The notes below the pieces were generated by a model. The model did not search any database, was not told the origin of the DNA, and worked only from the letters and a program-made list of their open reading frames with translations. 64,000 nucleotides of DNA from Macrostomum lignano (Eukaryota), in assembly GCA_002269645.1 (NCBI GenBank), contig NIVC01000217.1, positions 124,001-188,000 on the forward strand, in the 5' to 3' direction. Position 1 is the stretch's first letter. Every line of letters starts with the position of its first letter. The translations under genes were made by a program, and so were the position numbers. This document shows positions 26,745-60,540 of this stretch, piece by piece.

Positions 26745-29700
26745 CTAGCGCGACTCGTCAGCTGAGTAGCGGACCAGACAGAACACAATGTCCGATGCCA
26801 GCATGGGGAAGTCGGGCGCTGGGTTGGTGATGACGTACCGGGCGATGAGAGCCTGCTCGCCCTCCTCTGGCGGGGTGATGAAGCGGTACAGGCCGATGCA
26901 CAGAATCCCGTGCCGGTGCAGAGCGCCCAAGAATAGCTTGGAGAAGTCGCCCTGGCTGTACTGGCGGAGTCGCTCGTCGCTGACTGGCAGCTGGGCGACA
27001 CGAGCTCGATCTCGCCTGCGCAGCGTTTCCGGACTGCAGAAGCCGCCTCGGATGCCGGCACCCTCGGCGAGAATCTGCTCCAGCTCAGGAGTGGCGCCGC
27101 CGGTCACCAGAGTCCGGATGAGGGTCAGCGCGTTCTCGTTGAAATACGCGGTGCTCATCAGGGAGTCCAGCACACTCACAGCAAATGAGGTGCCGCAGGC
27201 GAACGGCTGCGTCATGTACAGCTCTGTGTCCGGATCGTCATCGTCGTCCTGCTCCAGGAATTGGACGTTTGCATCGACCGCCAACTCGGTGAGGATGCAA
27301 ATGTTGTTGAGACGATTCGAGCCCGAGCCCTGTTCGACAGGCGGCGTGTCGAAGGCCATGGCCTTGATGTTCAGGGAGCACAAGATCGCCTCCTTGTCGA
27401 CAAGAGTTGCATCGTCGCCCATTCCAGAGTTCTGCTTAGAGCTGAGCACGACGCACATTTGAGCAAGGTTGATGTTCACCGCTCTAAGGTTGGAACGGTT
27501 TAGCGGGGAGCCCGGAAAGAAGCTTAGCTTGGGAAAGTTTATCAAGGTCTTCCACTCGCGCCTCAGGTACTCCATGTTGCCGACAAATATGATGTGACGC
27601 AGCTCGCTATAATGAAAGTTGCTGGCCCTCAGAGGCATTACGAAGCTTCTGAGGCCAATTAAAGGACTTGATGAGTCTGCGAACACGCACACAACGATAT
27701 GGTTGCTGAAAACTGTTAAATTCACCTGCTCCCGGCTCAGTACTAGCTCTTCAAATGAGGTCTCTTGGCACCAGTGGAACATGCCTGTCGAGTCGAACCG
27801 TCGCTCGGACTGCTGCCCGAGTATTTTGGCTTCGTTAGGAGAGAGAAGTGACGGTCTGCGGCTGCCGGCGTTGAGTTCGGTGCTCGCTGGAGCTGAGGTG
27901 CCGCCGACGCCGCTGCTGCTGGCGCTGCCGCCGTTTCCGCTGGGGTTTCCACTGCCACCATTGCCAGCCGGTGTTGTTGTCAGGTTCGCCGAGCTGTCCT
28001 TGCTGTGCCGATTGCGAATCACAGTCTTGCCGGCCGAATGCTTCGGGTTGCTCTGCCTGCAGCGGCATCGCTTCACCAGCTCTGGGTCTGCAACGTCGCT
28101 GTGGCATCGGCTGCAGTAGAAGTAGGCCTTCTTCACCTCTTCGGCCGACTGAGCAACGAAGAACCCCTGAGTGCCTGCCTCTACTTTGATGCCCTCCTTC
28201 GGGTTGATGGCGATGCCAGTCTCGCCTTCAATGGCAATCAACAGGAGGTGCAGCTTGCTGAAGCACACCTCCGCTGCCGCAGGGAAACTCAGACCATCAA
28301 AAGCTGGCGATAGAAACTCGGTGTACATTTCCATGCCCGCCCCCTGCAAATAGTTGTTGAGCCATCTGGGGATGCTTTTCCCTTCACGGTAGCTGCGCAT
28401 GGTAAACAGATTCGCCAACAGGGTGGAGAAGCCGAATGCCATGCAGCTCTGAGCCAGGAAGCCTAGCTTCAGCTCGGCGACGCAGACGGCATCGTCGCCT
28501 TGCTTCCAGTCCCAGCTGGGGATGTTGAGCAGGTAGGTCTTGTTGTGGTACTGCATCAGCTGGATGATCACCTTGATGCGCTCGCAGAAGTTTTTAATTG
28601 AGATGACGCGCATGATGTTGGCGGCATCCTCGGCATCCGGGTCGGGGCAGTACTTGTTGGCCAGCACCAGACAGGCATCTGCAGACTCCAGGCCCACCCT
28701 GGCCAGGTCCCTCGTGTTCATCACGGAACCCTGAAAGAATTGAACCTGCGTGAAATGTCGCTTCAACAGGCCTTGCATCTCCAGGTCGGGTACGTGCTTG
28801 TCCAGCACCACAATCTGAACGTCGACATCCTCGCGATCCTCGTGCAGAAAATCGCCAAGAAAGTTGGCCACCGATTCGAAGGTGATGTGGCCGCACAGCA
28901 CGATGTGCTGTTTGCCTGCCTCCTTGCGAAAGTGGCCGCCGTACTTGTTGCGCGAGCTGAGGATGTCCGCAATCTCGGGAATAGAGTTGGCGAACACGGC
29001 CAGGCCGCCCATGATGACCAGCGCGGAGCCGATTTTGCCCGAGATCGTGGTGCAATAAACGTCTCCGTAGCCAACGGTTGACATTGTGACAATGACAAAG
29101 TAGATGCAGGTGAAGTAGTTCATGTCGTATAAGGTATTTTTGTTGGTAAAATTTGGCGGATCGCCAGAGTTTTCGACCAGGTGGATGAGACCTGCCGCGG
29201 TCAGGACCAGAGAAGCAAAGAAAGTGATCAGCTGTAGCAGCCGAATCCCTGTGCTGGTTCTTAGAATGTTTAAGTATTGAAGCACGTCCGGCAGGCTGAG
29301 AATTCTCAAGGCTCTGGTGGACCTGAGGCCGATCCAGTTCTGGTCAAGATAGACGGCAACAAATGACGGAGGAATGGTTAGAATATCCACTATGCTGTAC
29401 ATTTCAAACCAAAACCACAGTTTGTCCTGGGCGGCTATAAACCGAACAAAAAAGTACACCAGAAAAATGACGTTAAATGCCAGGTCCACCTGCTGCGTGA
29501 CGCTTTCGGACCAGGCGACGCACTCCTCCGTGTTTTTCATTCGGACGGTGTCAATTTGGTACACAACAAGAGACGCCATGCTAACGATGAATACCAGAAC
29601 TACCAGGATCCTACCCGTAGACGTCTGACCCGAGATGAGCTCGCCAGCCCAGTCCTTGGCTTCAGTGAGCCAGCTGATCTCTATCTGCTCCGACTCCTCC

Positions 29701-29921
29701 TCCGGAGGCTCCTCGTCCTCGTCAGTCTCCGGAGCGTAGCTTCGCTGCCCGCTGCCGATCCCAGAGCGGTGGCGCTGAATTAGGCGGCCGATGAACCGGC
29801 TCAGGAGGACAGTCAGAATGCCGCCTACCAGGGCGATCGCGCTGGACGCCAGAAAGATGTGCCACTTCCGGTGCTCAACGCAAGCAAGTTCCGGTGATGA
29901 AGAGGCATTGCTGCTAGACAT
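26745..29921 (-). CDS. KCNMA1: Large-conductance Ca2+-activated K+ channel alpha subunit (BK/Slo1), intronless, 1058 aa
   Basis: S0-S6 segments, filter TVGYGDV, S4 RSTRALR, RCK1 [10 protein letters not shown], heme motif CSRCH, Ca bowl [13 protein letters not shown], all in one continuous ORF. Confidence 0.97.
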
Positions 29922-33952: not shown

Positions 33953-33986
<34 letters not shown>

Positions 33987-34336
33987 CATTCCGCCCGGAT
34001 CGGAATGGCTTGATGACTGCTGGGCTGTAAAATATGCAAAAAAATCCACAAAGTTTTTTATTGATTCAAACGACATAAAAATGTTTTGCCCTGCAGATAG
34101 GAAGCAGCTTCGAAGTTTTTATGCTCCAAATTTTAATTGGAAAATTTGAAAACTTCTTCAAACAAGTCAAGCTGCGGTGCTAGAAAGCTAGAAAAGTTTC
34201 TTTATTCTAGTTGGTTAGAGTCCTTAACTTTGCTAATAAATACTTTTTCAGCAGAAGAATATCGGTTGGAAGGTTTATATCTCTAGCACGCTACTTAAAG
34301 TAACAGAGAAAGGGTTTTATTAGTAGAACATCTTGC

Positions 34337-34713
34337 TCAGTAACCGTGTTCATGGTTGATCTTCTTTGATGTCACTCCGCCAACCCCGCTGCCAGGCTTG
34401 CTGTCCTGGGTCAATCTGGCCACGTCCTCCCGGTTCATGAGGTCATTCAACTCCTGCTCGATGCGCAGCAGCTTGGCATTGCTCTCGTTCTCTTTGAACA
34501 AGGTGTCCTTACAGGTAACCTGAGCCAGGAGCGAATTCAACTGCGACTGCTCCAAGTTTTTGAATACAGTTTGATGGTTTTGGTTCGGCTCCGAATCGAT
34601 CTCCTGGATGAGGTTGTGCAGTCCGTAGTTCAGAGCTCGGGTGTCGCCGCCCTGCTTGGCGCCCGGATCCGACAGCTGACTGTCGCGCGGCAGCTTCTGA
34701 GCGGCCGGTTGAT
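34337..34713 (-). CDS. Uncharacterised 253-aa protein, exon 2
   Basis: Acceptor ttgcAG at 34715-34714, phase 1 compatible with exon 1; open to the stop at 34339-34337; GC-rich, coding-like. Confidence 0.7.
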
Positions 34714-34800
34714 CTGCAAGCGGACAAAAATATACAATTAAAGCTTTTACTTAAAGCCAGTTCATACTGCCCGACAAGTGGAAAGCGAGGACTTTCTGTA

Positions 34801-35147
34801 CCCGGTATTACGGTTTAGAAACTCCGGGGCTCTGGTCAGTTTTGGGTCGCCGATCCGGAGACTGCAAACGGGCTGGGATCTCCGACCGGAGATCTTAAAG
34901 GGTTTAGGATCTCCTTCGGAGAATAAAAACGGTTAGGGATCTCCACGATCGGAGATCCGTAACCGTTGTGGGATCTCCGGGGCATGGTCAGGTCTCCCTA
35001 TCCGGAGATCCAAAACCAGATTCTGTTATCCCCTCGGAGATTCTACACCGATATCCGTGAGGGCGATTGTAAAATCGCGTAATTTTTTTGGTTGGATCGC
35101 CGGGCCGGAGATCCTTAACTCCGGAGAGCAGAAACCCTAACACCGGC
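34801..35147. mobile_element. MITE-like element with an internal array of GATCTCC...GGAGATC palindromes
   Basis: Imperfect terminal inverted repeats ccggt(a/g)tta(c/g)ggttt and 7-9 short hairpins; no TSD found. Confidence 0.5.
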
Positions 35148-35224
35148 TGAGTAAGTGTGTGAAGTGCCATAACAGCCGTTTTTGCAAACTAATTACAACA
35201 GTGTATGAGCACCCTGACGAACTT

Positions 35225-35475
35225 TGAGCGACATTGTCACACAACCAGCGAGAGGCATTACTGCCCATTCCGCCGACTCCCCTAAGCAGGTACACAAGCG
35301 CGCGGATACGTACGCAATCATACGCACAGCAGCCCAACTTTATTTAACCTTAGTTGTGTACACTTTACTGTGCCTTGGGGGTTGGCCCTCAGGGCCGCTA
35401 ATTGCGCGTGCAGAGCCAAGCCGAGAATCGAACTTGGGCCGCTAGAGCGCTGCGCTAGATCAAGCACTAAGCTAC
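35225..35475 (-). mobile_element. tRNA-headed SINE ('family A'), most complete copy
   Basis: Minus strand: A-box tagcttagtg, B-box gttcgattc, then the shared central and tail modules. Confidence 0.8.
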
Positions 35476-35721
35476 GGCTTCCCAATGTAACTGACATGAA
35501 AAAATCCAGCATATAGCTACGAGCGTATCAAGCGTTAACAGATATAGCTCGCAGACTTTTATGCTTCCATTTACGCTCCTAGCAATAGCCAACAAAGAAG
35601 TTTCTATACAGTGGAGCTAAAATCTGGTAATTCAGACACTCGTGTCGTTCTACAAAAGAATGCACTGCAGACTATGCAAACCATTTAATCAGCTCAATGT
35701 TCGCTCTGGTTTGTGTCTCAC

Positions 35722-36106
35722 CTCCTCCCGTGCTTTTCACTCCGCCAATGCCAAACTTGAGTATGGACGCATCCGCGCCCAACGCCTGCTGCCCAATGGA
35801 GGCCGTGGAGTCAAGCGAGCCACGGTTTAAATCCGCAGGCGGTGTGCACAGCGGGAAGTGCTGCCGCACAATGCGGCTCTGCTCAACTTCAATGTTAATC
35901 GGTAGCAGCATCCGTTTTTGATCCGGGGAAGCCTCCAGTTTCTTGCGCAGGATGGCGCACACCAGGCACTCGGGATCGCGGCGCTTGCCGCAGGCTTCCA
36001 TCATCCGCTGGATCCCTTCGCGACTCAGACTTTCCGAGTGGTTGATAACAGTGACGTCATTTAAGTGTTTTTCGCCGATTGACGCTGTCTGTTTGCTTTT
36101 TTGCAT
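35722..36106 (-). CDS. Uncharacterised 253-aa protein, exon 1
   Basis: aaaATG at 36106, donor G|GTGAGA at 35721; 385 + 377 = 762 bp gives an intact frame. Confidence 0.7.
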
Positions 36107-36254
36107 TTTAAAAGGAGCTGACTTGGGGCGATTTAAGTAAAAGCAGCAAAACTATTGAGCAATTTTAACTTCCCAAATAATACGAGCTGTTTTTGACACC
36201 ATTAATAAAGCAAGCAGACATAGACAATTGTTTTTCCTTAATCGGGGATCTGTT

Positions 36255-36562
36255 TTATTAATTGATAATAATTGATTACACCTGCCCCACTTGGCCCAGA
36301 TGTGCAACCGACAGCTCAGCCGCAGCTTGTGCGGGGCATCTGAAGGCTGCGTACGGCTGTTCAGTCCAAGGACTGTGGGGTCGTCACACAACCTCGATTA
36401 CCCCAGCTAATGCTGGCACCAATTTTTAAGTTGAGTGAACTGAAGCAATGCAGAGCTTAAAGTGCCTTGCTCAAGGCCAAAAATTGTTCCAGTGGGATCG
36501 AGAATCGAACCCTCGACCTTCAAGTCGTGATTCCGACGCTCTGACCACTAGGCTATCACTCC
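36255..36562 (-). mobile_element. tRNA-derived CORE-type SINE
   Basis: A-box tagcctagtgg and B-box ggttcgattc, followed by ccttgagcaaggcacttt...cttcagttcactc, which resembles the CORE domain (MIR ccttgggcaagtcactt); AT-rich tail. Confidence 0.8.
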
Positions 36563-36682
36563 TTAGTTTTTAGTTTTTCAACTTTTCTTGATTTTTTTCA
36601 ACAAAACTAAGGCAATAGACTATAAGGAAATAATAAACGCTTAATGATAGGTACTTGATTTCATTCCTGATTTCACGCACAG

Positions 36683-36930
36683 ATGTGGGCAGAAACACCT
36701 ACACGACGAAGATTCGGCAGTCCAGCCCTCCGGTGACTTCCGATTCAACTTCTATCTGGTCGGCCGCTGCCCCATCCGTCATGCGCTGCCTTTCCAAGTG
36801 CAGCGCCAGAGCCGACTGCCAGGCCGCCGTTTTCTCCCAGCGGCTGCTCGCCTGCCACCTGCTGGAGTTCGCCTACCCGCCAGCCAGCCTGACCGGACCC
36901 GACTGGACTCTCTACCAGCGTGGCTGCTGA
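36683..36930 (+). CDS. Terminal exon encoding a PAN/apple-like domain
   Basis: Acceptor cacAG at 36681-36682; SVMRCLSKCSARADCQAAVF..ACHLL has the C-x3-C-x5-C...C PAN spacing; upstream exon not identified. Confidence 0.6.
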
Positions 36931-37874
36931 AAACGATGACAACAAAAAATTGACTTTTTTGGATAACCAAACGCAAATCAAGAACGTTGTCTTCTGTTGT
37001 CCTTGATGCAAAAAATAAACCCATCATTTACTTGCTAACCGTTTGATTGAAGCCCAGCTTAACAGTTCGTCCAATTGAACTAGCAAAACGATTGTAATCG
37101 TCAAGATGTTGACGAATTGACTGCAAAATATGGAGTTTCTACCAGCGGAGAATTTTGCTTAGATTTTAACAATTAGCAAGCTACGCGCGAGTATTTCTAT
37201 CCAATCCAACAGAGCTAATAGCGTCATTACATCGAGGCAAAACGCTTTTTTTTCAGGCAGCCTCTGTCTTTGGTGGGCACCAGTGTATCTTGGTGGGCGC
37301 CCATTTCTGTAGGTTGGCGCCCCTTTTTTAGGTTGGCGCCCCTGTCTCTTGGTGGGCCCCTCTTTTCTCTTGGTGGGCGCCAGTGTCTCTTGGTGAGCGA
37401 CCCTCTAAGTTCGCCACTTCAATGCAATCAGCTTGAAATTCGAGAAAGATTTAAATTGCCCAGAAGCAAAAATTGACTCACACTCACTCATATCTTTGAT
37501 TGATAAAAATTCCCCTATGGCACTTGAAATATCGTGGCAGCAACATTATATTATCACCCTCTGAATTAGTAAGGAATCTTAGCCCCTGACAGAGCAGTTC
37601 AGTGAGCAGTTTTTAATTGCATTTCGTTCCCACAGCCTTGCAGGAAAACTCTGCTTCAAAGTTACTGCATGGAAACATGTGATTGAAGTTGATGCAGCTT
37701 GTGGATGCGAAAAGTTGGACTGGTGAAGACTTGGCTGATTTTCTGATTTAATCAACAATTCAAAGCACGAGCAGTTTCATAGGCTGGCTTTAGGTTAGAT
37801 TTGGCTTCCACAATATCTCTTCATCAAGAGATTACAAAATGGTTAATAAGGTATTTAGTTGTAAAAGAAATCTG

Positions 37875-38052
37875 ACTGACTGACTCACTGACTTAGTGAG
37901 TGGGTGACTGACTGACTGACTGACTGACTGACTGACTGACTGACTGACTGACTGACTGACTGACTGACTGACTGACTGACTGACTGACTGACTGACTTAG
38001 TGAGTGGGTGACTGACTAACTGACTTAGTGAGTGGGTGACTAGCTGACTGAC
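37875..38052. repeat. (CTGA)n microsatellite with ttagtgagtgggtg interruptions
   Basis: Direct reading. Confidence 0.95.
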
Positions 38053-38565
38053 CGTAAGTAGGCAACGTTAATGAATTGGCTTCACAAGGTTTGATAACAT
38101 ATTCATCTCTTCAAAATGTTATCAGTAGTGTAGATAATATGACAATATGATTTGCAAACAGCGATATTGCTAGACTGTAAAGTATTGCGTAGCGTTCAAA
38201 CGTAAATGCTGCAAATCAACAGAAAAAACCGGATGTTTGGGCAGCCCGCACGAGGTTCAACGGTTTTTCCTTAGTCCTCAATATCGGAGCAGGTGGAAAT
38301 ATATTACTTTGGCAGAAAGAAGTTAATGAATAATGCATTTATTCGCCCAAGGAGCTGTGTGCACTTTTTCACCCCCCTCTCTACCTCGTCACTGTGCGAA
38401 CCCGGCAAACATCAAGCGGGAACCGAGAAGTTTTTTCGGTTCTCTCTCTCCCTCTCCTTCCTCTTCGCTTCAACGTATTGCAAACTGGCTATTGCGCCGC
38501 AGCCTCCAGCCCGCTTATCTTATCCGACCCGTTGCTCCTTAAATGCGCATTCCGATGGATAGAGA

Positions 38566-39843
38566 ATGAGGCCAGATCCGAAGAAATACCAGATTTTAGC
38601 TTGGCTGCTTAAAGCGGCTCTCGAGCACACTATGCCAGATCTCGAGGGTGAAAACTGCAGCACCGGTTCGCTGGGAAACTGGACAACTCAGTTTTATCCT
38701 ACGACTCAGTATCCTTTCAGTGAATCGTGGAACAGATTTCACTGGTGCGTCTTTGTTTGGCTGTTTCCGACGCTCTGCTTTGTTGGCGGCGTGATGAATT
38801 CGCTCTGCTTCTGGGTGATCCTGAGGCATCGCCGCCTGTTCCCAAGGGTCACGCGGCTGTTCATGCTCATCATTAGCTTGAACGATGCTCTCATCCTACT
38901 GCTGAAGGCACCGACGCATTATTTGACTTACATGTCGCAGCCGTTTGTAGCAAATGCCTGGGACTGGTTCGTCAATCCATTTTACGGCAGTCACGCTGGT
39001 TGCATTCTCTATGTGTTCGTCACCCACTATGCCCTGTTTGGTGCGCCTTTCTTTCAGCTGGGCCTCACTGTGGATCGCCTGGTAGCCGTGGCGACTCCGT
39101 TAAGAGCTCGGCGCATTATGACAGTGACAAAGACTGCAGCTCTGCTAGCTGCGGTGACCACTTTGGCCATGGTACTGCCGGTACTGCGCACGGCCACCAC
39201 TAGCTGGAACGCAGACACTTCAGCCTGCATCGTTGGGGAGAACCAAGACTATGAGTCAACCTATGTGAAGCTCGAACTGTTCTATGGCCGAGTTGCTTTG
39301 ACTGTCTGCCTCATCTCCGGCTCGCTGGTGATCTGCATCCTTCTTCGCCGGTCGGATGTTGCGGCAGCCGATGCTGCAGCTGAACTGGGTCAGGCCAACA
39401 ACAGAACGGCCGCTGTACGAAGATTCCGGACACTCACCCGTCTCAGCATTCTGTTGGGCCTTTTCAATGCAGCCTTTTTGATTTGCAATCTACCTTGGAG
39501 TTCGGCCGAAATGCTGCATCTAGTTGGCGCCCTCGACCAGATACCGTCGAACACTTATGAGCTTCTCTTGCGTCAATTGAACACTCTGATGTACTTTCAG
39601 TGCGTTCTAAACGTTCTGGTGTACTTTTCTGGCGGAAGCTTCAGACAGAAGTTCTCCGCTACCTACTCTCGCGGCTGTTGTCGGCGAATCTGTTGTTGCT
39701 GTCCTCAGCAGTCGGGCGCGATTGTCGAAGCAAACGTCTTCTCGTTCAGCGGGACCGTTAATCCCATGGCTGCCGCCGGTAGATATCAGAGAAATCGGGA
39801 CTCCGGATTCAGAAACGTTCGCGACTCAACCAAGAACTGTTAA
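38566..39843 (+). CDS. Rhodopsin-family (class A) peptide-receptor-like GPCR, intronless
   Basis: 425 aa with seven hydrophobic segments; TM1 GGVMN, TM2 ISLND, TM3 DRLVAV, TM6 FLICNLPW, TM7 LNVLVY; Cys-rich tail. Confidence 0.9.
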   Translation: MRPDPKKYQILAWLLKAALEHTMPDLEGENCSTGSLGNWTTQFYPTTQYPFSESWNRFHWCVFVWLFPTLCFVGGVMNSLCFWVILRHRRLFPRVTRLFMLIISLNDALILLLKAPTHYLTYMSQPFVANAWDWFVNPFYGSHAGCILYVFVTHYALFGAPFFQLGLTVDRLVAVATPLRARRIMTVTKTAALLAAVTTLAMVLPVLRTATTSWNADTSACIVGENQDYESTYVKLELFYGRVALTVCLISGSLVICILLRRSDVAAADAAAELGQANNRTAAVRRFRTLTRLSILLGLFNAAFLICNLPWSSAEMLHLVGALDQIPSNTYELLLRQLNTLMYFQCVLNVLVYFSGGSFRQKFSATYSRGCCRRICCCCPQQSGAIVEANVFSFSGTVNPMAAAGRYQRNRDSGFRNVRDSTKNC

Positions 39844-40775
39844 AACTTGCACTTCAAGCCACTTCAAGCACCTTGATAGACGTGTCCTAAGCCACAAGTA
39901 AAATTATATGAAGTTTGTATTATTTCATTAAAATGTTTTTAACTATACAGACATTCTGTTGTTTATTTCGTCAATCAGCTAGCTTCTCATCAGCTAAGTT
40001 TGTGTAATAGAAAAACTAATGTTTATATGGTTGATTGTTATAAAAACGTTATTGTTAGAATGACTTTGAATTCCATGAATACGTGCGTATATAGGCCAGA
40101 GCAGGACTATGCAAGATTTCATACAACACGTATTTGACTAGCTCTCTGATGTAGCTTGGAAGAAAATTTAGACCTTTGAAGGAATATTCATAATTTTTGT
40201 GCTTATACTTCCTGCTTGTATCCTGGATCTTGGTACTTCCTGGATGTTTGGTTCTTGTTTCAAATACCTACTGATACTGACTTTATTGCGGACATTTACT
40301 GATATAGGCTTCGCTCGGAAAGTCGAGAAGTCGAAAAGTTACGTAGATAGCTTTGAACTTTGTCGGCGCCCCATCTTATGCTACATGGTGCTGCACTAGC
40401 TATAGCATCAATCGTTCTGTACTCCGTTTCCGGGTTCTAAGCCAGCGCCGCATATATAAACAAAAGATGCAAACTATCTAACCTTCAAACGCGCCAATTC
40501 CTATAAAAATGCGTGTAGACATCATAAATGCGCATAAAGAGCGAACAATGTGTTTAAACTTAGCGACATCCGATATGGTTTAAGACGACGTTTTGGTCTG
40601 TATCGCATGACAAAACGCGAACAATGATAAAATGGCTTGGTTTCCTAAAAATACTACACCATTATTTTGATGACTTTGTTTAACGTATGCCACTTTGGAT
40701 GCTACTTGTATATTAGGACAGTAAATTTTCTACCTTGCTAGTTCAACTGACAGCGACATCTGAAGAATCACAACC

Positions 40776-41195
40776 ATGCATCATTACATTCGGAAACTTG
40801 TGTATTTAGCTGCCGTCGCTACATTTATTTGCTGTGTGGCTCTTCAAAGCTGGACAACGGTCAGATATCACAGGTTAAATCTGGAACCGTCAGAGACACT
40901 GACTAAACCCGATAACAAAGCGACGCATTCAGCAGTGGATATTGGCGACTTTCACGCTCACTACCGTCAGTTGCGAGAGGAAATCACTCGAAAATATTTG
41001 TACCGATTTGATCGGCAGACTCCTGCCAGTGATGAGGCTCAAGCCTGAGGAGGCCAACTTTCAACTACGAGTGAAAGCCGGTCTAGACTGGATGCATCGG
41101 CAGGACCTGGTGGTGGCAATCACTGTTCGCGATGCAGCTCGAGGCCTGCCCGACTCGCTGGCGAACCTCGACCGTTTGAGAGCCCTGTTTAACAG
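40776..41195 (+). CDS. GT-A glycosyltransferase (CAP59/GT69-like), exon 1, containing a +1 frameshift near 40990-41045
   Basis: Signal-anchor MHHYIRKLVYLAAVATFICCVAL in one frame (stop at 41048); catalytic start LVVAITVRDAARGLPDSL in the next frame; donor AG|GTTTGT at 41196. Confidence 0.7.
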
Positions 41196-42010
41196 GTTTG
41201 TGAAGGGGCTGTCTTTTCAATGCCTTACAAAATATTATTTTTATCCTCGACTCCGCCTCCTTTTTCCATTCCTAGAGACTTCAATTTTATTAAAACCTAA
41301 ATCTGGACTGCAGTATTACTAGTAGGACTCTGATTGCAGAAAGGGTTTTGGTCATGAGGTCACCCTGGCACCCTGGCAATTCTGCCCATTCCGCTGGGTC
41401 CTGAGAACAGACAAACGCGCCAATATTGTACGCAGGCACGCACTCGTACACATGGTCACACAGGGTGTACAGTGCATGGTTCTGACTTTCTAACCGTCAT
41501 GAATGTACACTCTCTGTCTCTTGGGGTTGACCTTCATGACCTAACTATGAATCGAACAACAACCCAGATGCGTTTTTCCGCTAAGCTGCTCTCTCTCTCC
41601 CTCTACATCTGGACTCTAGTTGGACTGTTTTTAACAAAAATTCTCACAGTACTCGGAAATTTAAATCGATTATACATGCTTATTATGGTCAATTGAGCAA
41701 ATTATTCGATGTGCATCAACCCTTACGGTGAGAATTGATGTCAAAAATGGCAAATAAGTTTAGATTGAGCTGCTACTCTCCTTGTAACAACTTTGAGCTG
41801 GGATTTGAAATAGAGGGTGCCAGTTTGCGGTCCCATCTGTGTTAAAGTTGTACTCCGTACAAACTGTACATACTATACGCTTCCCTCGGATGCAACACGT
41901 AATTGTAGAAGCTATGCCCTTGGTTGCACACATAGACAAAATGTAATTTAGTGTAAATGTTTTCGTATTTTGCCTAGTACAGATGTCACTAGCTCGATCG
42001 TATTCCACAG

Positions 42011-42151
42011 ATCGTGGATCGTAGCTGTGGAAAGCGACTCCATTGACACCACGCGAGTACTGCTGCACAGCATTGGCAAACGCGACCCGACGATGCGCCT
42101 GCTGGGCTGCGGCCGCGTCAACTCACCTGAACCGTGCTTGTTGAATGCCAG
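42011..42151 (+). CDS. CAP59/GT69-like glycosyltransferase, exon 2
   Basis: cacAG|...AG|GTGTGT, 141 bp, phase 2-2; IVAVESDSIDTTRVLL (ENDSxDxT-like motif). Confidence 0.8.
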
Positions 42152-42472
42152 GTGTGTGCTGTGACTTATTCTATTTATCATTGAACCTACACGATCTCTG
42201 CTTTACATTGTTCCAAAGACGTAACCTTGCTCGTCATATGCTTAGTTTTCGTTTGGGGCGATGCGCCTATTTGAAGCGCCTCAGTATCAGTGACGCCAGC
42301 ACCAACCGTAGGTCTTTCCCCGGGTATCATCTTTGATTTGACACCCGCAGCTCACAGTTTGACGTCTCTTGACAATCTCCAGTGCTCAAAAACACCGAAT
42401 ACGAGTATTTGATTGACCTGAACTGACCGTTACAGCGCACATATTACCTCATCCTCAATTGCATTGCTGCAG

Positions 42473-42658
42473 ATACGCCAGCACCCGTCGCAGTCATCAA
42501 CCCGGATGGTTGGTGAAGCGCACCGTAGCGGAAGAGATTGACAGAGGCCTCATCATGTCCGCCCTGCGCAACCAGTATCTGGATTACACTTATAGGCATC
42601 TGGCACCGATGGGCCCCACTCTGTTGCTAGTGCTGGATGCTGATATTGCCTGGAAAAG
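42473..42658 (+). CDS. CAP59/GT69-like glycosyltransferase, exon 3
   Basis: tgcAG|...AG|GTGACT, 186 bp, phase 2-2; MSALRNQYL and LLVLDADI (DxD). Confidence 0.82.
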
Positions 42659-43279
42659 GTGACTGTCTAGTTTATTTGATGACTTTTATTGATTAAGAAG
42701 GTTCAACATTACTAATAAGAGATTCAATTAATTGTCATTAGACAACGACAATTTAGCACTCTGTCAGTTTTAGGTCTAATACAACAAATCATCGTTATAG
42801 GGTGGGTCTCTAGGGTAGGATGCGACCGAATCTGGGACGCTATATAGCATCAAGCTAGCAGGCAGTTGACGAAGCTCAAAGTGCGCGCCAGTCCTATTCA
42901 ATAGAGTGCCTGAAGAGGCAGCAGCAGCACCTGCTTCGGCTATAAGCAGTTCTCTTCGGCGTGGATGATGCGGCCTGCCAGCGTTCAGGTATCAGCGTTG
43001 TAAAGTCTATTCTGACCAATGCTAGTACAACGCTGTTTTTGTTTAAACTATGCATCAGTTAGTTGCATTAAATAATTTTTGGCACTACTTTCGAGCGTTA
43101 TTATAGGCATCGCCTACTAAAGAGTAGTAGGAAAGGAGTGTGAAAAGAATCCCTATAGTCAGAGTCAAAAGTTTATGGCCCCATTATGTGCAGGGCTCTG
43201 AACATCTGGCCGATCGGGAGTTCGAATGATTATTAAGCATGCATCTGAATGCCCAAATACCTCTTCTAATTGCCGCCAG

Positions 43280-43688
43280 ATGGAACCTGGACAACATTGC
43301 TCAAGGACTCTATTACTTTGCGAGCAGACCTCAGCTGCATCAGCTGTGCGCTAACACGCTTAGCGAGTCCAATGAGCTGCAGGACCCCTGCTCGCTGACA
43401 TTTTACAATAACAAGCAGTTTGGCGAGGAACGCAAACTGCCTACAGTTCACTACAATCACGTCATGGCCAACCTGTCAGCAAAAAGCCACCTGCCGCCTA
43501 TCAAAGTAGCCAGCTGCTTTCAATCATTTGCATTTTATAGACTGCAATACCTGGCAAACAGAAGGCTATTTTATCAACGAGCCCATGGTGAATGGATTTG
43601 CGAGCACAACACTTTGTCTAGGCAGCTGGCTGAGGTGTACATTGATCCGCTAATGCGTCTCGCAGTCCGACGTGCCTATGTTGGCTGA
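43280..43688 (+). CDS. CAP59/GT69-like glycosyltransferase, last exon
   Basis: Acceptor gccAG at 43278-43279 continues the frame (K-R-W-N-L-D); PIKVASCFQSFAFYR and ICEH motifs; stop at 43686-43688. Confidence 0.8.
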
Positions 43689-44114
43689 GGCGTGAGCAAG
43701 AGCCTGTAGCATCCAGCGACAGTTTCACATTCACCTTAACAGTCGATCGCATAGTAACACGCAAAATATTGCCTCTGGAATTATTAAAATCAATAGCTGA
43801 AAATTCTCGACTATATATCTTTTGCTTGCTAGTAGTTAGGGAATTAAATATTTCAAACAAAATTTCATCGAAATTCGTTGTTTTGAAAGAGAACACCACA
43901 GAGATGGCTCAAAAAGGGTTTATTGTTTCATATTTATGAAAGCTTTGACGTTCATTGGAGGGTTATCCCAACTGATCGCTATTTCTTTTTTATCACGCAA
44001 TTGTTTTTGATACGGTTGGGTTGAGACGAAAACCATCCCGGGATTTTTCTGTACCCATATCTCTATATGCCAAGGGTTGGAAAACTTTTTCACCTGAAGA
44101 GCCAGATGAAGAAT

Positions 44115-44352
44115 CTAGCTAGAGGAGGGGAGAGAGGAGACGGAATAGAGAAGAGAGGAGAGGAGGGGAGAGAGAAGTAGAGAAAAGAGAGGAGAAGGGA
44201 GAGGAGAGAGGAGAGAAGGTAGATGAGAGAAGGGAAAGGAAGAGGAGATCAGGAGAGAATGTAGAGGAGAGGTGAGAATGGAGAAGAGAGAAGAGAAGAT
44301 AGAGGAGAGGAGAGAAAGGAGAGGAGAGAAGAGAGAGAGATAAGAGAGAAGA
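44115..44352. repeat. GA-rich low-complexity tract
   Basis: Direct reading. Confidence 0.9.
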
Positions 44353-45005
44353 GCGCTAAAAGACACAGACCTTGAGCAGGTCTGATTGTTACAATGAAGT
44401 TTCAAAGAACCCGAGGGCCGGATAGAAGCTAAAGTCCCTATCCTCTAGTAACGATGTGCTATAGTCCCTACATGTATGTTGTACTAAGCCTCTGAGACAC
44501 TAGATGAGAGGAACTGCTGGTCAGTATCCCGGTACATTATGTTTATATTTACTGTGCCTAAACCAATACACGTGCTGAATAAAATATTATGTTGCTCCTT
44601 GCCAAGTTCTTGAAGATGTTCCAAAAGTACAACTCGCTGCTCCGGAAGTAGCTAGATAGTACCGTTGTACTACCTATCGATTTGCCTGAAAAAGAACCTA
44701 AAACGTTAGCCTTAGACTTGGTAGGGTTGCTGCCACCTTTGTGTGCGGACTCGACGCGTCGGCAGAGTTGTCTATCCCTCACCTGAAATAAAATAACGAA
44801 GTCTCTCGGAGCAAAGGCAAATCTGAAAATGTCTCGACAGTTGATCGTTCTAGTAGATGCTGCTCGAACCTGAAAACCTGAAAACCCTGAAATGAGAGAG
44901 GAGAGCTCGGAGGCAGAGAGGCAGCTCCGGACGAGGCCAGGCAGGACGACGCGAGGCTCTGCGCTGCTCCACGATCTGGAGAAAAAATGGCTCGCAGATG
45001 CTCTG

Positions 45006-45390
45006 TATTTATAGCCGAGCGGACGCCCAAAAGTCACGTGAGTTTCATGCAGTGAGCGCGTGAAACTTCCTTATTTGGTCCTCTGAATCATGCGAGCGAT
45101 GCGTGATCCAAGGCCAACTTCCAAATAAGGTAACCCTGTCACGCTGCTGTGGCGTGACTCAAGGTCAGCTGCCACGCAAAACTAGCGTGCACAGTCACGT
45201 GTTTTTCTGCTAAAAATAGAACTTGGGCGAATGAGTCATCCTGTTTACTCCCTCTAGGCAGCCTTTACACTCCGCGCAGGTGATGAGTCATCCAGCTATG
45301 CTTCCTCAGCGCGAGTGGGAAGACATTGAGTGTGGCTACTCGCGCCTGCTCGCCTGCTCGGGCGATGAGTCATCGGGGAGTAAACACTTC
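45006..45390 (-). promoter_or_regulatory. TATA promoter with a dense cluster of CArG/Ets, MEF2, AP-1, forkhead and E-box motifs
   Basis: TATAAATA 45013-45006; CArG boxes 45069-45078 and 45121-45130, each overlapped by acttcc; CTAAAAATAG 45210-45219; TGA(G/C)TCA at 45155, 45232, 45284, 45366; TGTTTAC 45242; GTAAACA 45380; GTCACGTG 45033 and 45194. Confidence 0.8.
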
Positions 45391-46184
45391 GGCCCAGCAC
45401 AGGGTAACTCTCTCAAACAGGTGGACTGAGCTGCTGTGCAGCGGATCACAGCACTCTTAGGAAAAGCTAGTGAATGTTGCTGAATAGCCAGTTAGCAGCC
45501 AGTCACTACAATATAATAAATTCAAAGTAAGTACATGCGATTCAATTAAAATCTGCTGCAGTGATTAAATACGCGACCACGGTGTTAACGCAAGTCGTAG
45601 CGTACAAAATCATACCTTACCGTCGGTGCGGCTGTGTTAACTCTGCATTAATATCAAACACTGTTTTTGAAGCCGATGATTAAAGATAGGCGATCTAGCT
45701 GTTTTTCCTGCAAACCTTCTTTTCTCTGAGCCCAATCTTTGAGCAAAGTGTAAAGTAAAACCAACACGAACAGTTGTCAGATTTCAGCAGCACGCGACCT
45801 TTTTAAGATACCCAGAATTTTTCGAAAGCCATGCTCAAACACAAGTGCTTTTATTGGGAATTTTTTATCTTTAATTCTAATTAGAACGGCCCCTTTTCTC
45901 GCACGATATTTTGTTTTTTAACTAACACATATTTATCCCGTTCGACGAATTTGCAAGGACGACTAAAAGTAACATATTCATACATGTACAATATATGTAG
46001 TCCTTTTAGTAGCCCTTGCAAAATTGACCGTCGTAGTTTACAAAAAATATGTGAAATAAAGAAGGACTAAAAATTGCTGTCAAAATACATGTATTTCACA
46101 TGTAGATCAAAACGGGGCGTCGACCGCCTAGGTGCAAAAATGAGTACCTGGTCGGCGCTGGTCGTGTGTTTTGCCGGGGTCTAT

Positions 46185-50966: not shown

Positions 50967-51517
50967 GTAATATTTTTTATTTTGTGCTTCATTGATTGTG
51001 CTATGTTTTTTTAGATGTCAAAATTTTTACAATCTTAGATACCTAAAGGTTTTTTGTCATTTGAATCATTGTCTATCTGTCTATCTTTGATCTTTTTCAA
51101 ATTAGCTTTTTTTTTAAACATTTTTTGGCAATCATGCATAACTTTTTGCTTAATATTTCAAAAGGGAAAGAAGTCAAATATAAAAAAATGCTTCAATGTA
51201 TACATGCCCAACAACCATCTGGACTGGATGGGTGAAATGGCTACCAGCCAAGGTAAATCACAAAAATAAAAAATGCAAGAAATGAAAATTTTGGATAAGA
51301 AAAGAAAAGAAAAAGAGAGAGAAATGAAAGAGGAAAAAGAAAAAAAAGCAAGAAAAGTCATATACAAATTGAAAATAAAGTTGCAATTGGGTGAACTAAG
51401 TTGCAAATCTAGACAAAGCTAAGTTGCACTGGATGGGTGAAATTTTGAGGTTAGGCATGTATGTTTCAATGGGCACTCTGTTTCTTAATTAAATTGGTCA
51501 GTTTAACTATTTAAACC

Positions 51518-52799
51518 GGCTACAGGTCAAAAGGGCGACAGATCAAAAGGGCGACAGTTAAAAGGGCGACAGTCAAAAGGGCGACAGTCAAAAGGGCGAC
51601 AGTTACAGTGTATTTATATTGAAAATACGAGTTCCACGTACATTAAAAGTATTTGTTAAAAGCAGTAAACATGTATTATACTTGTATTTGTTAAAATGCA
51701 TTGTTAAAATTGTACGAGCAGTTAAAATGGGGTTGTATAAAAGCTGGACACGTATTGGACACACTATTTCTAAAGTGGTTTTGTCTCGCATAGAGACGCC
51801 TAACCGCAGTCACTTCTGTGAAACTTGTCTCTGCCTGGCTGAAAGCTTGTAATGAGTGAGTAGGCTGGGTTGGAGGGTAATAGTGGATCGGGAGGGGCTG
51901 TGGGTAGCTGTATAGGAAGGCAGGCCTATACCTGTACCAAGGTGCTCTGACGGTATCTCTCAGGCACCCTCTGAGCGTACAGTCAGCGACCCTATTAAAG
52001 CTGGAGTGTGCCAGAACCAGGACTGAGTCTGAGCAGGACGAGACCGTTGGCACGGTCATAATAGAAATGGCGGGTTGGCGAAGCAAAGGGTGAAATAGTC
52101 CCGGCGATTAGCCCTCCTGCCGCTTCAAAGATAAGAGACTGTCTGTTGGCAAGAGTACCCGGGGTTTAGTTGGGGGGGAGGCTCCTTCGGGTTGCCACGG
52201 CCGTGGGGGCGGTCTTATGACTGGTGTTTTTGGCCTATCTAACCTAGGAAAAGGCACGGGCTCCCCTGAATGGTTCACTCTTCTCCCTCTAGCCTCGGGG
52301 AGGTTTATGATTTGTACCCGGGGGTGGTGGGCAGTCGGTCCCAGCATGGTAGCCACGGCTCTAGGCCTTCGGGCCACCCCTAATAGGCTGGAGTCTATCA
52401 AACCTGGTTTTTGGGCACGGGCTTCCTGACTGGTATGTCGTTCCGCTGTCACTGTCCCCCGGGGAGGTTTGGTTTTTTTGATTCAGCCCTGTACAGTCCT
52501 CTATAGTCTAACTTGGCTTTTAGTGTACATTAGTTCACTCCCTAGTAGGAAACTCATTTAGTCTAGTGGCGTAAGAGCCTATTTCAATGGCTGAGGCGCC
52601 GGAGCACTTATCTTAGTTAGTTAGTTAGACACACTATTTCTAAGAAACGGACACACTATTTCTAAGAAACGAGGTTTCCCGTCCTTCCACTTAAGTAGTT
52701 CTTGGTCTAATACCCTGTCGCCCTTTTGACTGTCGCCCTTTTGACTGTCGCCCTTTTAACTGTCGCCCTTTTCATCTGTCGCCCTTTTGATCGGTTGCC
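51518..52799. mobile_element. Mutator/Foldback-like element with tandem-repeat TIRs, in scrib intron 1
   Basis: Perfect 9-bp TSD atttaaacc (51509-51517 and 52800-52808); TIRs made of five copies of tcaaaagggcgacag. Confidence 0.9.
51774..52627 (+). mobile_element. Non-coding retroposon (distant family B) nested in the MULE
   Basis: 16-bp flanking duplication gacacactatttctaa (51758-51773 and 52628-52643); (TTAG)n 3' tail; contains ggtggtgggcagtcggtcccagca...ataggctgg. Confidence 0.7.
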
Positions 52800-53962
52800 A
52801 TTTAAACCTATTCTTGGCCAATGTACAATAAAGAACATGTATTCATAATAAAGCTAAGGAGTTTTATGACCCCTTGTATAGCAGGCAATATTGCGGGAAA
52901 GTGTAGTATATAGTATATGTTAGAAAATTCCAACATATAAACATTTTAGCTGGCATACATCTAGCATACAAATGCTTTAGCTAATATATATAATGGTATA
53001 CAAGAAGGAAATACAACTTTCTGGCACAATCATTGGCTTATAATTTTTAACTATACATGTTCAAGCTTGCAGTATCACATACTAAAGTGTTGAAGTATGT
53101 ATTATAATTGCAAAAATTACGCTAAGCAATCCTTTGCTATAATAGAAATTAATTTCAATTTTAAAACAGTAGATTAATTTTTTAAATAATAAATCTAATG
53201 TTTCTACAGTTACTAGTAAAAACTATATCTAAAAATAGTAAACATAACTATTTTGTTTTACTAATTATTTCTGTTTTTTAAATAATATAGTTTTCCTTCT
53301 TTTGCAGCAATTATTCACTACAAATATGCGTATTACTACTTGTAATATTAGTTATGTGCTTTTTTATCATAGAATTTTTAGTGGGGTACAATTTACTAGA
53401 ACTTTTAATTGATATAATTTATTGGCATACATTTTACTAGATAGCCAAATAATTTCTGGCATACATGTAACACAATCTGCAATATGGATAGTAGGCTTGT
53501 AATTTTATTTTAGTGTTGATTGAATTTTATTGTTTACCATATATTTATCTAACAAACAATCAATTAAAAAAGAGAAAGATTATAAAGCTAGTCTTAAAAT
53601 GACTAAAATGTGATATACAAAGCCTTTTTATCAATCCCTTGAACTACTCTAATCTTGTTTATTTTATTTAATAACACAAAGAGGGTAGCACAGTGGCAAA
53701 TAGAGGCAGTATCTAATGCACCTAATTAATTCAGAATTATTTGGCAAATATGTATATAAAGCTTAAACAAATTGGAAATATAGGTTAAATATTCAAAAAA
53801 ACATGTTTTTAATGCTTTCAATATTTAAATTTTGAATTTGAATACTCCCATGAGGTCTTAGTGCACTAGTGGTTACTAAAGATGGTAAACAGAAAAAACT
53901 ATGTGATAATACTAAAGTTGTTTTTTTATATTTTATATTATTTTATTATTATATTTATACAT

Positions 53963-54118
53963 GCGCAACTTTGGGAATCACCTGGCCGTTTCTATTGGCA
54001 ACACACACATGTAAGTCGCTATTGGCTAAGAGCAGTCACGCGACTACTATTCTGTCCGATAGCAACTTACATGTGTGTGTTGCCAATAGAAATAGCCAAG
54101 TGAATCCTAAGGTTGTGC
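53963..54118. mobile_element. Palindromic MITE
   Basis: ~65-bp inverted arms (tttctattggcaacacacacatgtaagt and acttacatgtgtgtgttgccaatagaaa) around a short spacer. Confidence 0.75.
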
Positions 54119-55300: not shown

Positions 55301-55418
55301 AAAATCTTCGCCATCACCCAGTTGAAGCGGCTAACACTCAGTGACAATTCACTCACACGGATTCCTCCAAATATTGGCAATCTCACAGCATTGCTGGAGC
55401 TGGATGTCAGTCGAAATG
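55301..55418 (+). CDS. scrib: Scribble exon 2 (LRR)
   Basis: aacAG|...G|GTAAGT; KIFAITQLKRLTLSDN..LLELDVSRN. Confidence 0.9.
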
Positions 55419-55492
55419 GTAAGTTGTCTCTTCAATTTAACTCAAAATCATCAGTTTTTTATATTGATATCATTTGTAACATTAATTTTTAG

Positions 55493-56652: not shown

Positions 56653-56734
56653 GTGAGTGCTTACTGCTCAGTGTATGATGGGCCGAGCTTGAAACTTTTG
56701 ACTGAAAACTTAATGGGCTAGGAGCTTCTTAATT

Positions 56735-59129: not shown

Positions 59130-60540
<1,411 letters not shown>

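What the first reader, a model, noticed from the sequence alone, without database searches (positions are those of the whole stretch)
44783..45390. Textbook immediate-early-gene promoter with no adjacent protein-coding ORF
Seen: within about 380 bp upstream of a minus-strand TATAAATA box lie two perfect CArG boxes (CCTTATTTGG, CCAAATAAGG), each overlapped by an Ets core (acttcc), a perfect MEF2 site (gCTAAAAATAGa), four AP-1 sites (three as ATGAGTCAT), two forkhead sites, two GTCACGTG E-boxes and TCAAGGTCA. Established: SRF+Ets (serum response elements), MEF2 and AP-1 clusters are the architecture of egr/fos-type stimulus- and wound-induced promoters. The ~200 nt downstream of the TATA box contain no ATG and end at CAG|GTGAGG (44783). 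Inference: a non-coding first exon or lncRNA under strong activity or injury control, which would matter in a regenerating flatworm.
Basis: partly seen in the sequence, partly recalled or inferred. Interest (0 to 1): 0.7.

Follow-up and report, generated by a model that had tools for sequence, protein, structure and literature searches.

The report
Signal-responsive promoter of a non-coding transcript
A 400-base stretch of the flatworm Macrostomum lignano genome looks like a real, single-copy gene switch packed with binding sites for signal-activated factors. It appears to start a short spliced RNA with no protein-coding capacity, but nothing here shows that it is switched on by injury.

Summary
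It holds both of the window's two CArG+GGAAGT composites, all three ATGASTCAT, 4 of 11 AP-1 cores, a MEF2 site, TCAAGGTCA, two GTCACGTG and two forkhead sites, all within 380 bp upstream of a minus-strand TATAAATA with an initiator. The block has no second copy in 109 kb of M. lignano DNA and shows no transposon hallmarks.

Exon 1 (206 nt) has no ATG. It is followed by the only textbook short intron I could find in the window (97 nt, CAG|GTGAGG, CTAAC branch point, pyrimidine tract, CAG). Exon 2 runs to an AATAAA with a GT-rich element. The predicted RNA is about 1 kb and its longest ORF is 38 codons.

The best reading is a Pol II promoter of SRF/AP-1/MEF2 type driving a short spliced non-coding RNA. 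Two same-strand coding genes lie further downstream and could be the real targets. One is a two-exon gene found here (36106-34337), matching M. lignano uncharacterized protein A0A1I8JC49. The other is an intronless BK/Slo channel (29921-26745).

Wound or activity induction is inferred only. CArG plus MEF2 fits muscle expression equally well, and the Ets cores overlap the CArG boxes in a non-canonical way. Interest is moderate, and public 5'-end, poly(A) and ATAC data could settle it.

The parts
45365..45386 (-). Distal AP-1 site ATGASTCAT (45365-45373) and forkhead site TRTTTAC (45380-45386). This is the upstream edge of the module.
45283..45291 (-). Second ATGASTCAT AP-1 site. It shares 16 of 19 flanking bases with the site at 45356-45374.
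45231..45248 (-). Third ATGASTCAT AP-1 site (45231-45239) and a forkhead site (45242-45248).
45210..45219 (-). MEF2 consensus YTAWWWWTAR (CTAAAAATAG).
45194..45201 (-). Distal GTCACGTG E-box, of bHLH-ZIP / USF / TFE type.
45155..45171 (-). Fourth AP-1 core TGASTCA (45155-61) overlapping TCAAGGTCA (45159-67, ERR/FTZ-F1-type half-site), followed by CAGCTG (45166-71).
45117..45130 (-). Distal CArG box CCTTATTTGG with an overlapping GGAAGT(T).
45065..45078 (-). Proximal CArG box CCAAATAAGG with an overlapping GGAAGT(T), 52 bp from the distal copy.
45033..45041 (-). Proximal palindromic E-box (G)TCACGTGA, about 45 bp upstream of the start site.
45006..45013 (-). TATA box TATAAATA. It is one of only four minus-strand TATAWAWR matches between 29900 and 46500.
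44981..44990 (-). Predicted start site. Either the initiator CCA(+1)TTTT with A at 44988 (25 nt after the first T of the TATA box), or C at 44981 (32 nt after it).
   Evidence: inference from consensus spacing
44783..44988 (-). Exon 1, about 206 nt, with no ATG.
44686..44782 (-). Intron 1, 97 nt. Donor CAG|GTGAGG, branch point CTAAC at 44709-44705 (A is 20 nt from the 3' splice site), 80% pyrimidine tract, acceptor CAG. It is the only match to this stringent pattern on either strand of the window.
43899..44685 (-). Predicted exon 2, about 790 nt. It includes a CT-rich microsatellite (about 44140-44360). Its sORFs are at most 38 codons.
43919..43924 (-). First AATAAA after exon 2 begins, followed by CA and a GT-rich element (TGTGGTGTT).
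34337..36106 (-). Possible downstream target 1: a two-exon gene. ATG at 36106; exon A runs to 35722 (GAG|GTGAGA); the intron is 1008 nt; exon B runs from 34713 to TGA at 34339-34337; AATAAA follows at 34321. The product is 253 aa, matching M. lignano uncharacterized protein A0A1I8JC49.
26745..29921 (-). Possible downstream target 2: an intronless BK/Slowpoke channel ORF of 1058 aa. It has its own CCAAT/GC-box region at about 30150-30200.

Best explanation
The block 44981-45390 is a compact RNA polymerase II promoter on the minus strand of the Macrostomum lignano genome. Its core is a TATA box plus an initiator. The 380 bp upstream carry two SRF (CArG) sites, four AP-1 sites, one MEF2 site, two CACGTG E-boxes, an ERR/FTZ-F1-type half-site and two forkhead sites.

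Transcription would start at about 44988 (or 44981). It would produce a 206-nt ATG-free first exon, remove a canonical 97-nt intron, and continue through exon 2 to the poly(A) signal at 43924-43919. The result is a spliced, polyadenylated RNA of about 1 kb with no credible ORF, that is, a long non-coding RNA gene.

By analogy with SRF, AP-1 and MEF2 target promoters in other animals, its output is expected to follow MAPK, Rho-actin or calcium signalling (wounding, mechanical stress, activity).

Shown here: the sequence anatomy, its statistical excess, its uniqueness, and the absence of coding capacity.

Inferred: that the promoter fires, the exact transcript ends, and above all what induces it.
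For: - Motifs and their enrichment.
- TATA box with an initiator at consensus spacing.
- The block is unique in the window and absent from two other M. lignano loci, while other window segments do recur there.
- No terminal repeats or LTRs.
- The only stringent short intron in 128 kb of sequence (both strands) sits directly after exon 1. Only three AG|GTRAG donors occur on this strand across 15 kb.
- First AATAAA with a GT-rich downstream element lies 1.07 kb from the start site.
- Longest ATG ORF in the transcript model is 38 codons and the first ATG is at nt 355.
- No Pfam domain, no homolog of the exon-1 or exon-2 frames, no Rfam family, and no conserved miRNA.
- In M. lignano, <=2 kb upstream of the start site sufficed for tissue-specific reporters. 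Non-coding transcripts exist but were removed from the GenBank annotation (PMC5730564).
Against: - No transcript, 5'-end, poly(A) or chromatin data could be reached, so activity is unproven.
- The intron pattern was defined after I had seen the intron.
- One AATAAA within about 1 kb is not unusual.
- A strong 5' splice site after a short ATG-free first exon, and an ATG-free run of 511 nt, are also what the leader of a protein-coding mRNA looks like.
- Two same-strand coding genes lie downstream.
- The predicted RNA has no AUUUA destabilising element, and the block has no CRE.
- The GGAAGT cores overlap the CArG boxes, so canonical SRF-TCF geometry is not met.
- Conservation in sister species or in the paralogous copies of this hidden polyploid could not be checked.
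Confidence: 0.4

Rival explanations
1. The promoter is real, but the transcript is the non-coding leader of a downstream protein-coding gene on the same strand. The target would be the 253-aa gene at 36106-34337 (an intron of about 8.6 kb) or the BK/Slo channel at 29921-26745 (about 14.8 kb). Joining would be by cis-splicing, or within a long polycistronic unit resolved by spliced-leader trans-splicing.
For: - Exon 1 ends in a consensus donor, and the ATG-free run fits a translated mRNA's leader.
- The 253-aa gene is the next minus-strand coding gene. It is independently annotated as A0A1I8JC49, and its leader is ATG-free only for about 95 nt.
- Drosophila slo has at least five promoters over 7 kb, including a muscle promoter, and its expression is inducible (PMC2020501).
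Against: - The canonical 97-nt intron and a nearby poly(A) signal offer a complete local transcription unit.
- A plus-strand GPCR gene (38566-39843) would have to sit inside the intron.
- The 253-aa gene and the GPCR are head-to-head with 2.4 kb between them, the usual place for their own promoters.
- Slo has its own CCAAT/GC-box region, and the 253-aa gene with its own AATAAA lies in between.
- Acceptors upstream of both ATGs are weak, with pyrimidine fraction 0.60.
- The average M. lignano intron is 1.1-1.4 kb.
- The two paralogous Slo loci show no comparable cluster within 8.7-10 kb upstream.
Confidence: 0.25
2. The promoter and transcript are as described, but regulation is constitutive and tissue-specific (muscle or neuron) rather than immediate-early or wound-induced. 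Paired CArG boxes, MEF2 and an E-box form the classic muscle-gene grammar.
For: - Two CArG boxes, one MEF2 site and one CAGCTG are present.
- There is no CRE and no AUUUA element.
- The Ets cores are not in ternary-complex geometry (sequence; own knowledge of the c-fos SRE).
- Nuclear-receptor half-site motifs (NR4A1-type) are muscle-enriched in flatworm accessible chromatin (PMC11398382).
Against: - Four AP-1 sites, three in the extended palindromic form, are more typical of stress- or growth-responsive promoters.
- No TEAD/MCAT site is present.
- No muscle structural gene lies downstream.
Confidence: 0.25
3. It is a relic: the promoter, first exon and first intron of a gene whose coding part was lost or displaced in this copy of a recently duplicated, rearranging genome. 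It may still be transcribed, but the RNA has no function of its own.
For: - The signals are well formed but followed by a CT-rich microsatellite and no ORF.
- M. lignano is a hidden polyploid with many duplicated loci (PMC10468722 abstract).
- Annotated proteins from this region differ from the window by indels, which suggests several copies exist.
Against: All core signals (TATA, initiator, donor, branch point, acceptor and every 9-14-mer site) are intact, which argues for ongoing constraint or a very recent origin. No paralogous copy could be examined.
Confidence: 0.12
4. It is not a promoter. It is a distal enhancer for neighbouring genes, or a chance or transposon-derived cluster with no transcript.
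For: There is no expression evidence. The sites were picked by eye from many possible motif families.
Against: - The homotypic excess was never reached in 20,000 simulations.
- A TATA box, an initiator and a canonical intron are all correctly ordered on one strand.
- There is no second copy and there are no terminal repeats.
Confidence: 0.08

Closest known systems
Serum-response-element promoters of immediate-early genes (c-fos, egr-1, junB type)
   Same: CArG boxes within 150 bp of a TATA box, AP-1 sites, and a compact module of <400 bp.
   Different: The GGAAGT cores share bases with the CArG boxes instead of lying 2-3 bp away. There is no CRE. No transcription-factor ORF lies downstream. 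The predicted RNA has no AU-rich element. Induction is untested.
SRF/MEF2-driven non-coding host genes (miR-1/133, miR-143/145-CARMN type) and AP-1-driven pri-miR-21
   Same: A non-coding Pol II transcript under CArG, MEF2 and AP-1 control.
   Different: A lineage-specific small RNA is not excluded.
Muscle-gene promoters with paired CArG boxes plus MEF2 (actin, SM22, myosin type)
   Same: Two CArG boxes, a MEF2 site, an E-box, a TATA box, and a non-coding first exon followed by an early intron.
   Different: No structural gene follows. There is no TEAD/MCAT site. Four AP-1 sites are present.
Alternative upstream promoters of slowpoke (Drosophila slo C0/C1/C2; PMC2020501)
   Same: Same strand and upstream of a BK channel ORF. 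The first exon is non-coding. The Drosophila gene has tissue-specific and inducible promoters.
   Different: It lies 15 kb away, with another same-strand gene and a plus-strand GPCR in between. No splice evidence exists. The Drosophila induction runs through CREB sites, which are absent here.

Membership tests
SRF-TCF serum response element / immediate-early promoter | CArG box CC(A/T)6GG close to the core promoter | tested here: met
   Two perfect boxes lie at about -80 and -135 from the predicted start. They are 2 of only 4 in 64 kb.
SRF-TCF serum response element / immediate-early promoter | Ets (TCF) site beside, not inside, the CArG box, allowing a ternary complex | tested here: inconclusive
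   GGAAGT(T) follows both boxes but uses the box's own GG. In c-fos the core lies 3 bp outside the box (own knowledge). Binding was not testable.
SRF-TCF serum response element / immediate-early promoter | Rapid, protein-synthesis-independent induction by a stimulus | not testable with these tools
   No expression data were reachable.
SRF-TCF serum response element / immediate-early promoter | Short-lived transcript (AU-rich elements) | tested here: not met
   The 0.99-kb transcript model contains 0 ATTTA.
Long non-coding RNA gene | No ORF of credible length or homology | tested here: met
   The longest ATG ORF is 38 codons. There were 0 Pfam hits and no homolog.
Long non-coding RNA gene | Own promoter, splice signals and poly(A) signal | tested here: met
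   TATA box plus initiator, a canonical 97-nt intron, and AATAAA with a GT-rich element. These are sequence predictions only.
Long non-coding RNA gene | A transcript is actually made | not testable with these tools
   RAMPAGE, poly(A) and RNA-seq data exist for M. lignano (PMC5730564) but could not be queried.
Alternative distal promoter of the BK/Slo gene | First exon spliced to an acceptor upstream of the Slo ATG | tested here: inconclusive
   The only candidate acceptor close to the ATG, at 29972, has a weak pyrimidine tract of 0.60; a stronger one at 30190 (0.73) lies about 270 nt upstream, inside the CCAAT-box region. There are no reads to test either.
Alternative distal promoter of the BK/Slo gene | No independent same-strand gene between promoter and coding exon | tested here: not met
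   The two-exon gene 36106-34337, with its own AATAAA, lies between them.
Muscle-type CArG/MEF2 promoter | Paired CArG boxes, a MEF2 site and an E-box upstream of a contractile or cytoskeletal gene | tested here: not met
   The sites are present, but no such gene lies downstream and there is no TEAD site.
Interspersed repeat / LTR promoter | Multiple copies; terminal repeats | tested here: not met
   There is no second copy in the window or in 45 kb of other M. lignano loci, and no TIR or LTR. Genome-wide copy number was not testable.
pri-miRNA / snoRNA host gene | A known small RNA embedded in an exon or intron | tested here: not met
   Rfam found nothing at gathering thresholds in the window and nothing relevant at E<=5 in 29900-46000. 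There were no matches to conserved mature miRNAs.

The most novel reading that the evidence does not exclude
This is a wound- or activity-induced long non-coding RNA gene in a regenerating flatworm, switched on directly by SRF, AP-1 and MEF2 through a 400-bp promoter. That would make it the first compact injury-responsive promoter usable for transgenesis in the only flatworm with stable transgenic lines. Alternatively, the same module could be a distal, stimulus-dependent promoter feeding the downstream orphan gene or the BK channel.
Probability: 0.25. Interest if true: 0.55.

Novelty: new member of a known kind. Interest (0 to 1): 0.35.

Why it matters
If active and inducible, the 400-bp block would be a ready-made injury or activity reporter for M. 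lignano transgenesis. In that species, <=2 kb of upstream sequence has been enough for faithful reporters (PMC5730564).

It would also show that the SRF/AP-1/MEF2 promoter grammar known from vertebrates operates almost unchanged in an early-branching flatworm. And it would add a non-coding RNA to the early wound response, which so far is described mainly through protein-coding genes.

If it turns out to be constitutive, or to be a leader exon, it is an ordinary promoter.

Tried and rejected
- **Exact look-ups.** The GPCR and Slo ORFs were not on record in public assemblies.
- **GPCR as an anchor to fetch the locus elsewhere.** No homolog at E<=1e-10.
- **Three-frame Pfam scan by DNA reference.** Replaced by a pseudo-protein of stop-free segments joined by X, which gave 0 families.
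- **Homolog search with pseudo-proteins.** The trimmed 4944-aa version timed out. The 923-aa version found nothing. That search missed A0A1I8JC49, which the exhaustive HMMER search later found, so the word-index negative is weak.
- **Slo paralog loci L001 and L002.** Coding similarity only, with no promoter homolog and no comparable motif cluster.
- **pri-miRNA or snoRNA host.** No Rfam or mature-miRNA match.
- **LTR or transposon origin.** No repeats.
- **Metagenome scan for the doubled CArG-GGAAGTT pattern.** 18 hits. All were tandem or coding repeats, or an interspersed repeat of an unidentified eukaryote, and were uninformative.
- **Look-ups of the downstream gene.** P0121 has no contig on record.
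- **Plus-strand ORFs at 40.9-43.7 kb that looked protein-like.** No Pfam or PDB hit.
- **Prokaryotic promoter/terminator scan.** Irrelevant for this genome.
- **Literature searches for Macrostomum wound or immediate-early genes, and for planarian SRF.** Nothing locus-specific.
- **Cloned M. lignano promoter sequences in the supplement.** Truncated, so no motif comparison was possible.

Full report
**Origin of the window.** The window is Macrostomum lignano DNA. The 1058-aa intronless minus-strand ORF at 26745-29921 is a BK/Slowpoke channel (Pfam Slo-like_RCK, Slowpoke_C, BK_channel_a, Ion_trans). Apart from gene-model gaps, it is identical residue for residue to UniProt A0A1I8JSB2 of M. lignano.

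**The observation.** Reading the minus strand from 45400 to 44780 and scanning with IUPAC consensus patterns confirmed every listed site.
- TATAAATA at 45006-13.
- GTCACGTG at 45033 and 45194.
- Two perfect CArG boxes, at 45069-78 and 45121-30. Each is followed on the minus strand by GGAAGT(T), which shares the box's GG.
- TGASTCA at 45155, 45232, 45284 and 45366. The last three are in the extended form ATGASTCAT.
- TCAAGGTCA at 45159, CTAAAAATAG (MEF2) at 45210, and TRTTTAC at 45242 and 45380.

The whole 64-kb window has only 4 CArG boxes, 3 ATGASTCAT, 11 TGASTCA, 1 TCAAGGTCA and 2 CArG-GGAAGT composites.

In 420-bp sliding windows, only windows overlapping this block contain all seven motif classes. 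Two other M. lignano loci (45 kb) never exceed three, and the few windows in this window that score 4-6 are most likely partial overlaps of the block; their positions were not listed. None of 20,000 Markov simulations of the block's own composition gave two CArG boxes, four AP-1 sites, or the observed total. The classes were chosen after the fact, but the homotypic excess survives any reasonable correction.

Paired sites share extended flanks, 16 of 19 bases for two AP-1 sites and 13 of 15 for the E-boxes. The two CArG composites lie 52 bp apart.

**Not a repeat, as far as can be seen.** The segment 43500-46500 has no second copy in the window, apart from the microsatellite and a tandem array outside the block. 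It does not occur in two other M. lignano loci that I could fetch, whereas several other window segments do recur there. There are no terminal inverted or long terminal repeats. Genome-wide copy number could not be measured.

**Core promoter and transcript anatomy.** The TATA box is one of four minus-strand TATAWAWR matches in 16.6 kb. An initiator, CCA(+1)TTTT, lies 25 nt downstream of it. A pyrimidine-run C lies at 32 nt.

From 45047 to 44538 the minus strand has no ATG, a run of 511 nt. This is the longest such run outside tandem repeats. Against a dinucleotide shuffle it reaches only P of about 0.05.

Exon 1 (about 206 nt) ends at CAG|GTGAGG. Ninety-seven nucleotides later comes TTCTTTTTCAG|G, preceded by a perfect CTAAC branch point whose A lies 20 nt from the acceptor. 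A stringent short-intron pattern (MAG|GTRAG, 40-160 nt, CTRAY branch point, >=70% pyrimidine tract, YAG) matches exactly once on the two strands of the window, and that match is here. I defined the pattern after noticing the intron, so this is supportive rather than independent evidence.

Only three AG|GTRAG donors exist on this strand between 45000 and 29900.

Exon 2 runs through a CT-rich microsatellite to the first AATAAA (43924-43919). That signal is followed by CA and TGTGGTGTT. The mature RNA would be about 0.99 kb. Its first ATG is at nt 355, its longest ATG ORF is 38 codons, and it has no AUUUA.

**No adjacent coding sequence.** Minus-strand stop-free segments of >=44 aa from 45000 to 29990 gave no Pfam family at E<=0.1. 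A pseudo-protein of the exon-1 frames and the nearest ORFs had no homolog. Rfam found nothing relevant.

**What lies further downstream.** A codon-usage score trained on three M. lignano Slo genes ranked two minus-strand segments highest. They join in frame through GAG|GTGAGA and TTTGTCCGCTTGCAG|A into a 253-aa ORF. The ATG is at 36106, the intron is 1008 nt, the stop is at 34339-34337, and an AATAAA lies 15 nt beyond the stop.

An exhaustive HMMER search found one relative: the 247-aa M. lignano 'uncharacterized protein' A0A1I8JC49. It matches both exons. So the gene is real by independent annotation, although it has no known domain or solved relative.

This gene starts 8.9 kb downstream of the promoter, and the Slo ORF starts 15 kb downstream. 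Between the promoter and both genes lies a plus-strand rhodopsin-family GPCR ORF at 38566-39843, which is head-to-head with the 253-aa gene. Slo has its own CCAAT/GC-box region.

The acceptors upstream of both ATGs are weak. The average M. lignano intron is 1.1-1.4 kb. However, 39% of transcripts are trans-spliced and 7% of transcription units are polycistronic (PMC5730564). A long transcription unit therefore cannot be excluded.

Drosophila slo provides a precedent for several upstream, tissue-specific and inducible promoters (PMC2020501). The two paralogous M. lignano Slo loci show no similar cluster within 8.7-10 kb upstream.

**Most likely mechanism.** I read the block as a functional Pol II promoter that drives a short, spliced, polyadenylated non-coding RNA. 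Its output would be set by SRF, AP-1 and MEF2, and therefore probably by MAPK, Rho-actin or calcium signals. The anatomy is shown here. Activity and regulation are inferred.

Several points cut against a strict immediate-early reading.
- The GGAAGT cores overlap the CArG boxes rather than flanking them as in c-fos (own knowledge).
- TCAAGGTCA is an ERR/FTZ-F1-type site (own knowledge).
- There is no CRE.
- The RNA has no AU-rich element.
- CArG plus MEF2 is equally the grammar of muscle genes.

**Rivals.** There are four:
- a leader exon of the 253-aa gene or of Slo;
- the same promoter with constitutive muscle or neural expression;
- a relic promoter left by duplication in this hidden polyploid;
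- an enhancer or a chance cluster.

**Verdict.** This is a new member of a known kind, of moderate interest. The decisive public data (RAMPAGE, poly(A), RNA-seq, single-nucleus ATAC, and sister-species genomes) exist, so the question can be settled quickly.

Noticed in passing
window 34337-36106 (-): A previously unnoticed two-exon gene. ATG at 36106; donor GAG|GTGAGA, with exon A ending at 35722; a 1008-nt intron that contains an interspersed repeat; acceptor with exon B starting at 34713; TGA at 34339-34337; AATAAA at 34321. The 253-aa product matches M. lignano uncharacterized protein A0A1I8JC49 (247 aa). It has no Pfam domain, no PDB relative, and no relative outside M. lignano in 1.8 billion representatives.
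   Followed up: yes
window 26745-29921 (-); loci L001, L002: An intronless BK/Slowpoke channel ORF of 1058 aa. M. lignano has at least three Slo paralogs, 69-76% identical at protein level, and all appear as single long ORFs. The UniProt model A0A1I8JSB2 differs from the window only by a 15-aa gap, a frame-shifted stretch and the C-terminus.
   Followed up: partly
window 38566-39843 (+): An intact 425-aa rhodopsin-family GPCR ORF (7tm_1, E=2.4e-15). It has no homolog at E<=1e-10 in 5.8 billion clusters and is absent from the M. lignano annotation. It is either an orphan or a fast-evolving receptor.
   Followed up: partly
window 40903-41319, 42417-42659, 43230-43685 (+): Plus-strand stop-free segments that read like protein (for example LLLVLDADIAWKR) and that converge on the predicted lncRNA. 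They have no Pfam or PDB hit and a low codon-usage score. Their coding status is unresolved. If they are real, the lncRNA would end about 210 nt from this gene's stop codon, tail to tail.
   Followed up: partly
window 42126 (-): An isolated perfect donor CAG|GTGAGT on the minus strand, with no recognisable exon upstream of it.
   Followed up: no
window 55187-55492 and 56258-56653 (+): Two exons of a leucine-rich-repeat protein gene on the plus strand (LRR_8, LRR_14).
   Followed up: no
window 51511-52806: A transposon-like element bounded by 92-nt inverted arms that are 92% complementary. The arms are themselves built of tandem about-15-nt units (AAAAGGGCGACAGT-).
   Followed up: no
window 7600-9300, 14400-16300, 21000-25400, 56700-57500, 59000-63300: Very large minisatellite arrays with periods of 8, 15-16, 19, 23, 39 and 47 nt. 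They show extreme strand asymmetry (GC skew down to -0.77 at 21-25 kb) and together make up a large share of the window.
   Followed up: no
window 35206-35432, 3338-3506, 6895-6978, 53954-54130, 2957-3082, 18720-19527: Interspersed repeats that recur within the window or in the two other M. lignano loci. They served as a positive control that repeats were detectable.
   Followed up: partly
window 3691-4464 (+) and 20099-20806 (+): A mitochondrial ribosomal L50-like ORF (E=1.5e-5) and an ORF with a weak GIY-YIG nuclease hit (E=6e-4, below Pfam's cut-off). The latter might be a Penelope-like element remnant.
   Followed up: no
loci L005, L006, L009, L017 (metagenome VSKX01): The doubled motif CCAAAT(A/T)(A/T)GGAAGTT ... 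ACTTCCAAATAAGGAAGTT recurs in four contigs of an unidentified eukaryote, next to dynein-, WD40- and RAD51-like exons. That is, it is part of an interspersed repeat there. Its 15-mer CCAAATAAGGAAGTT is identical to the proximal site in the window, but nothing else aligns.
   Followed up: partly
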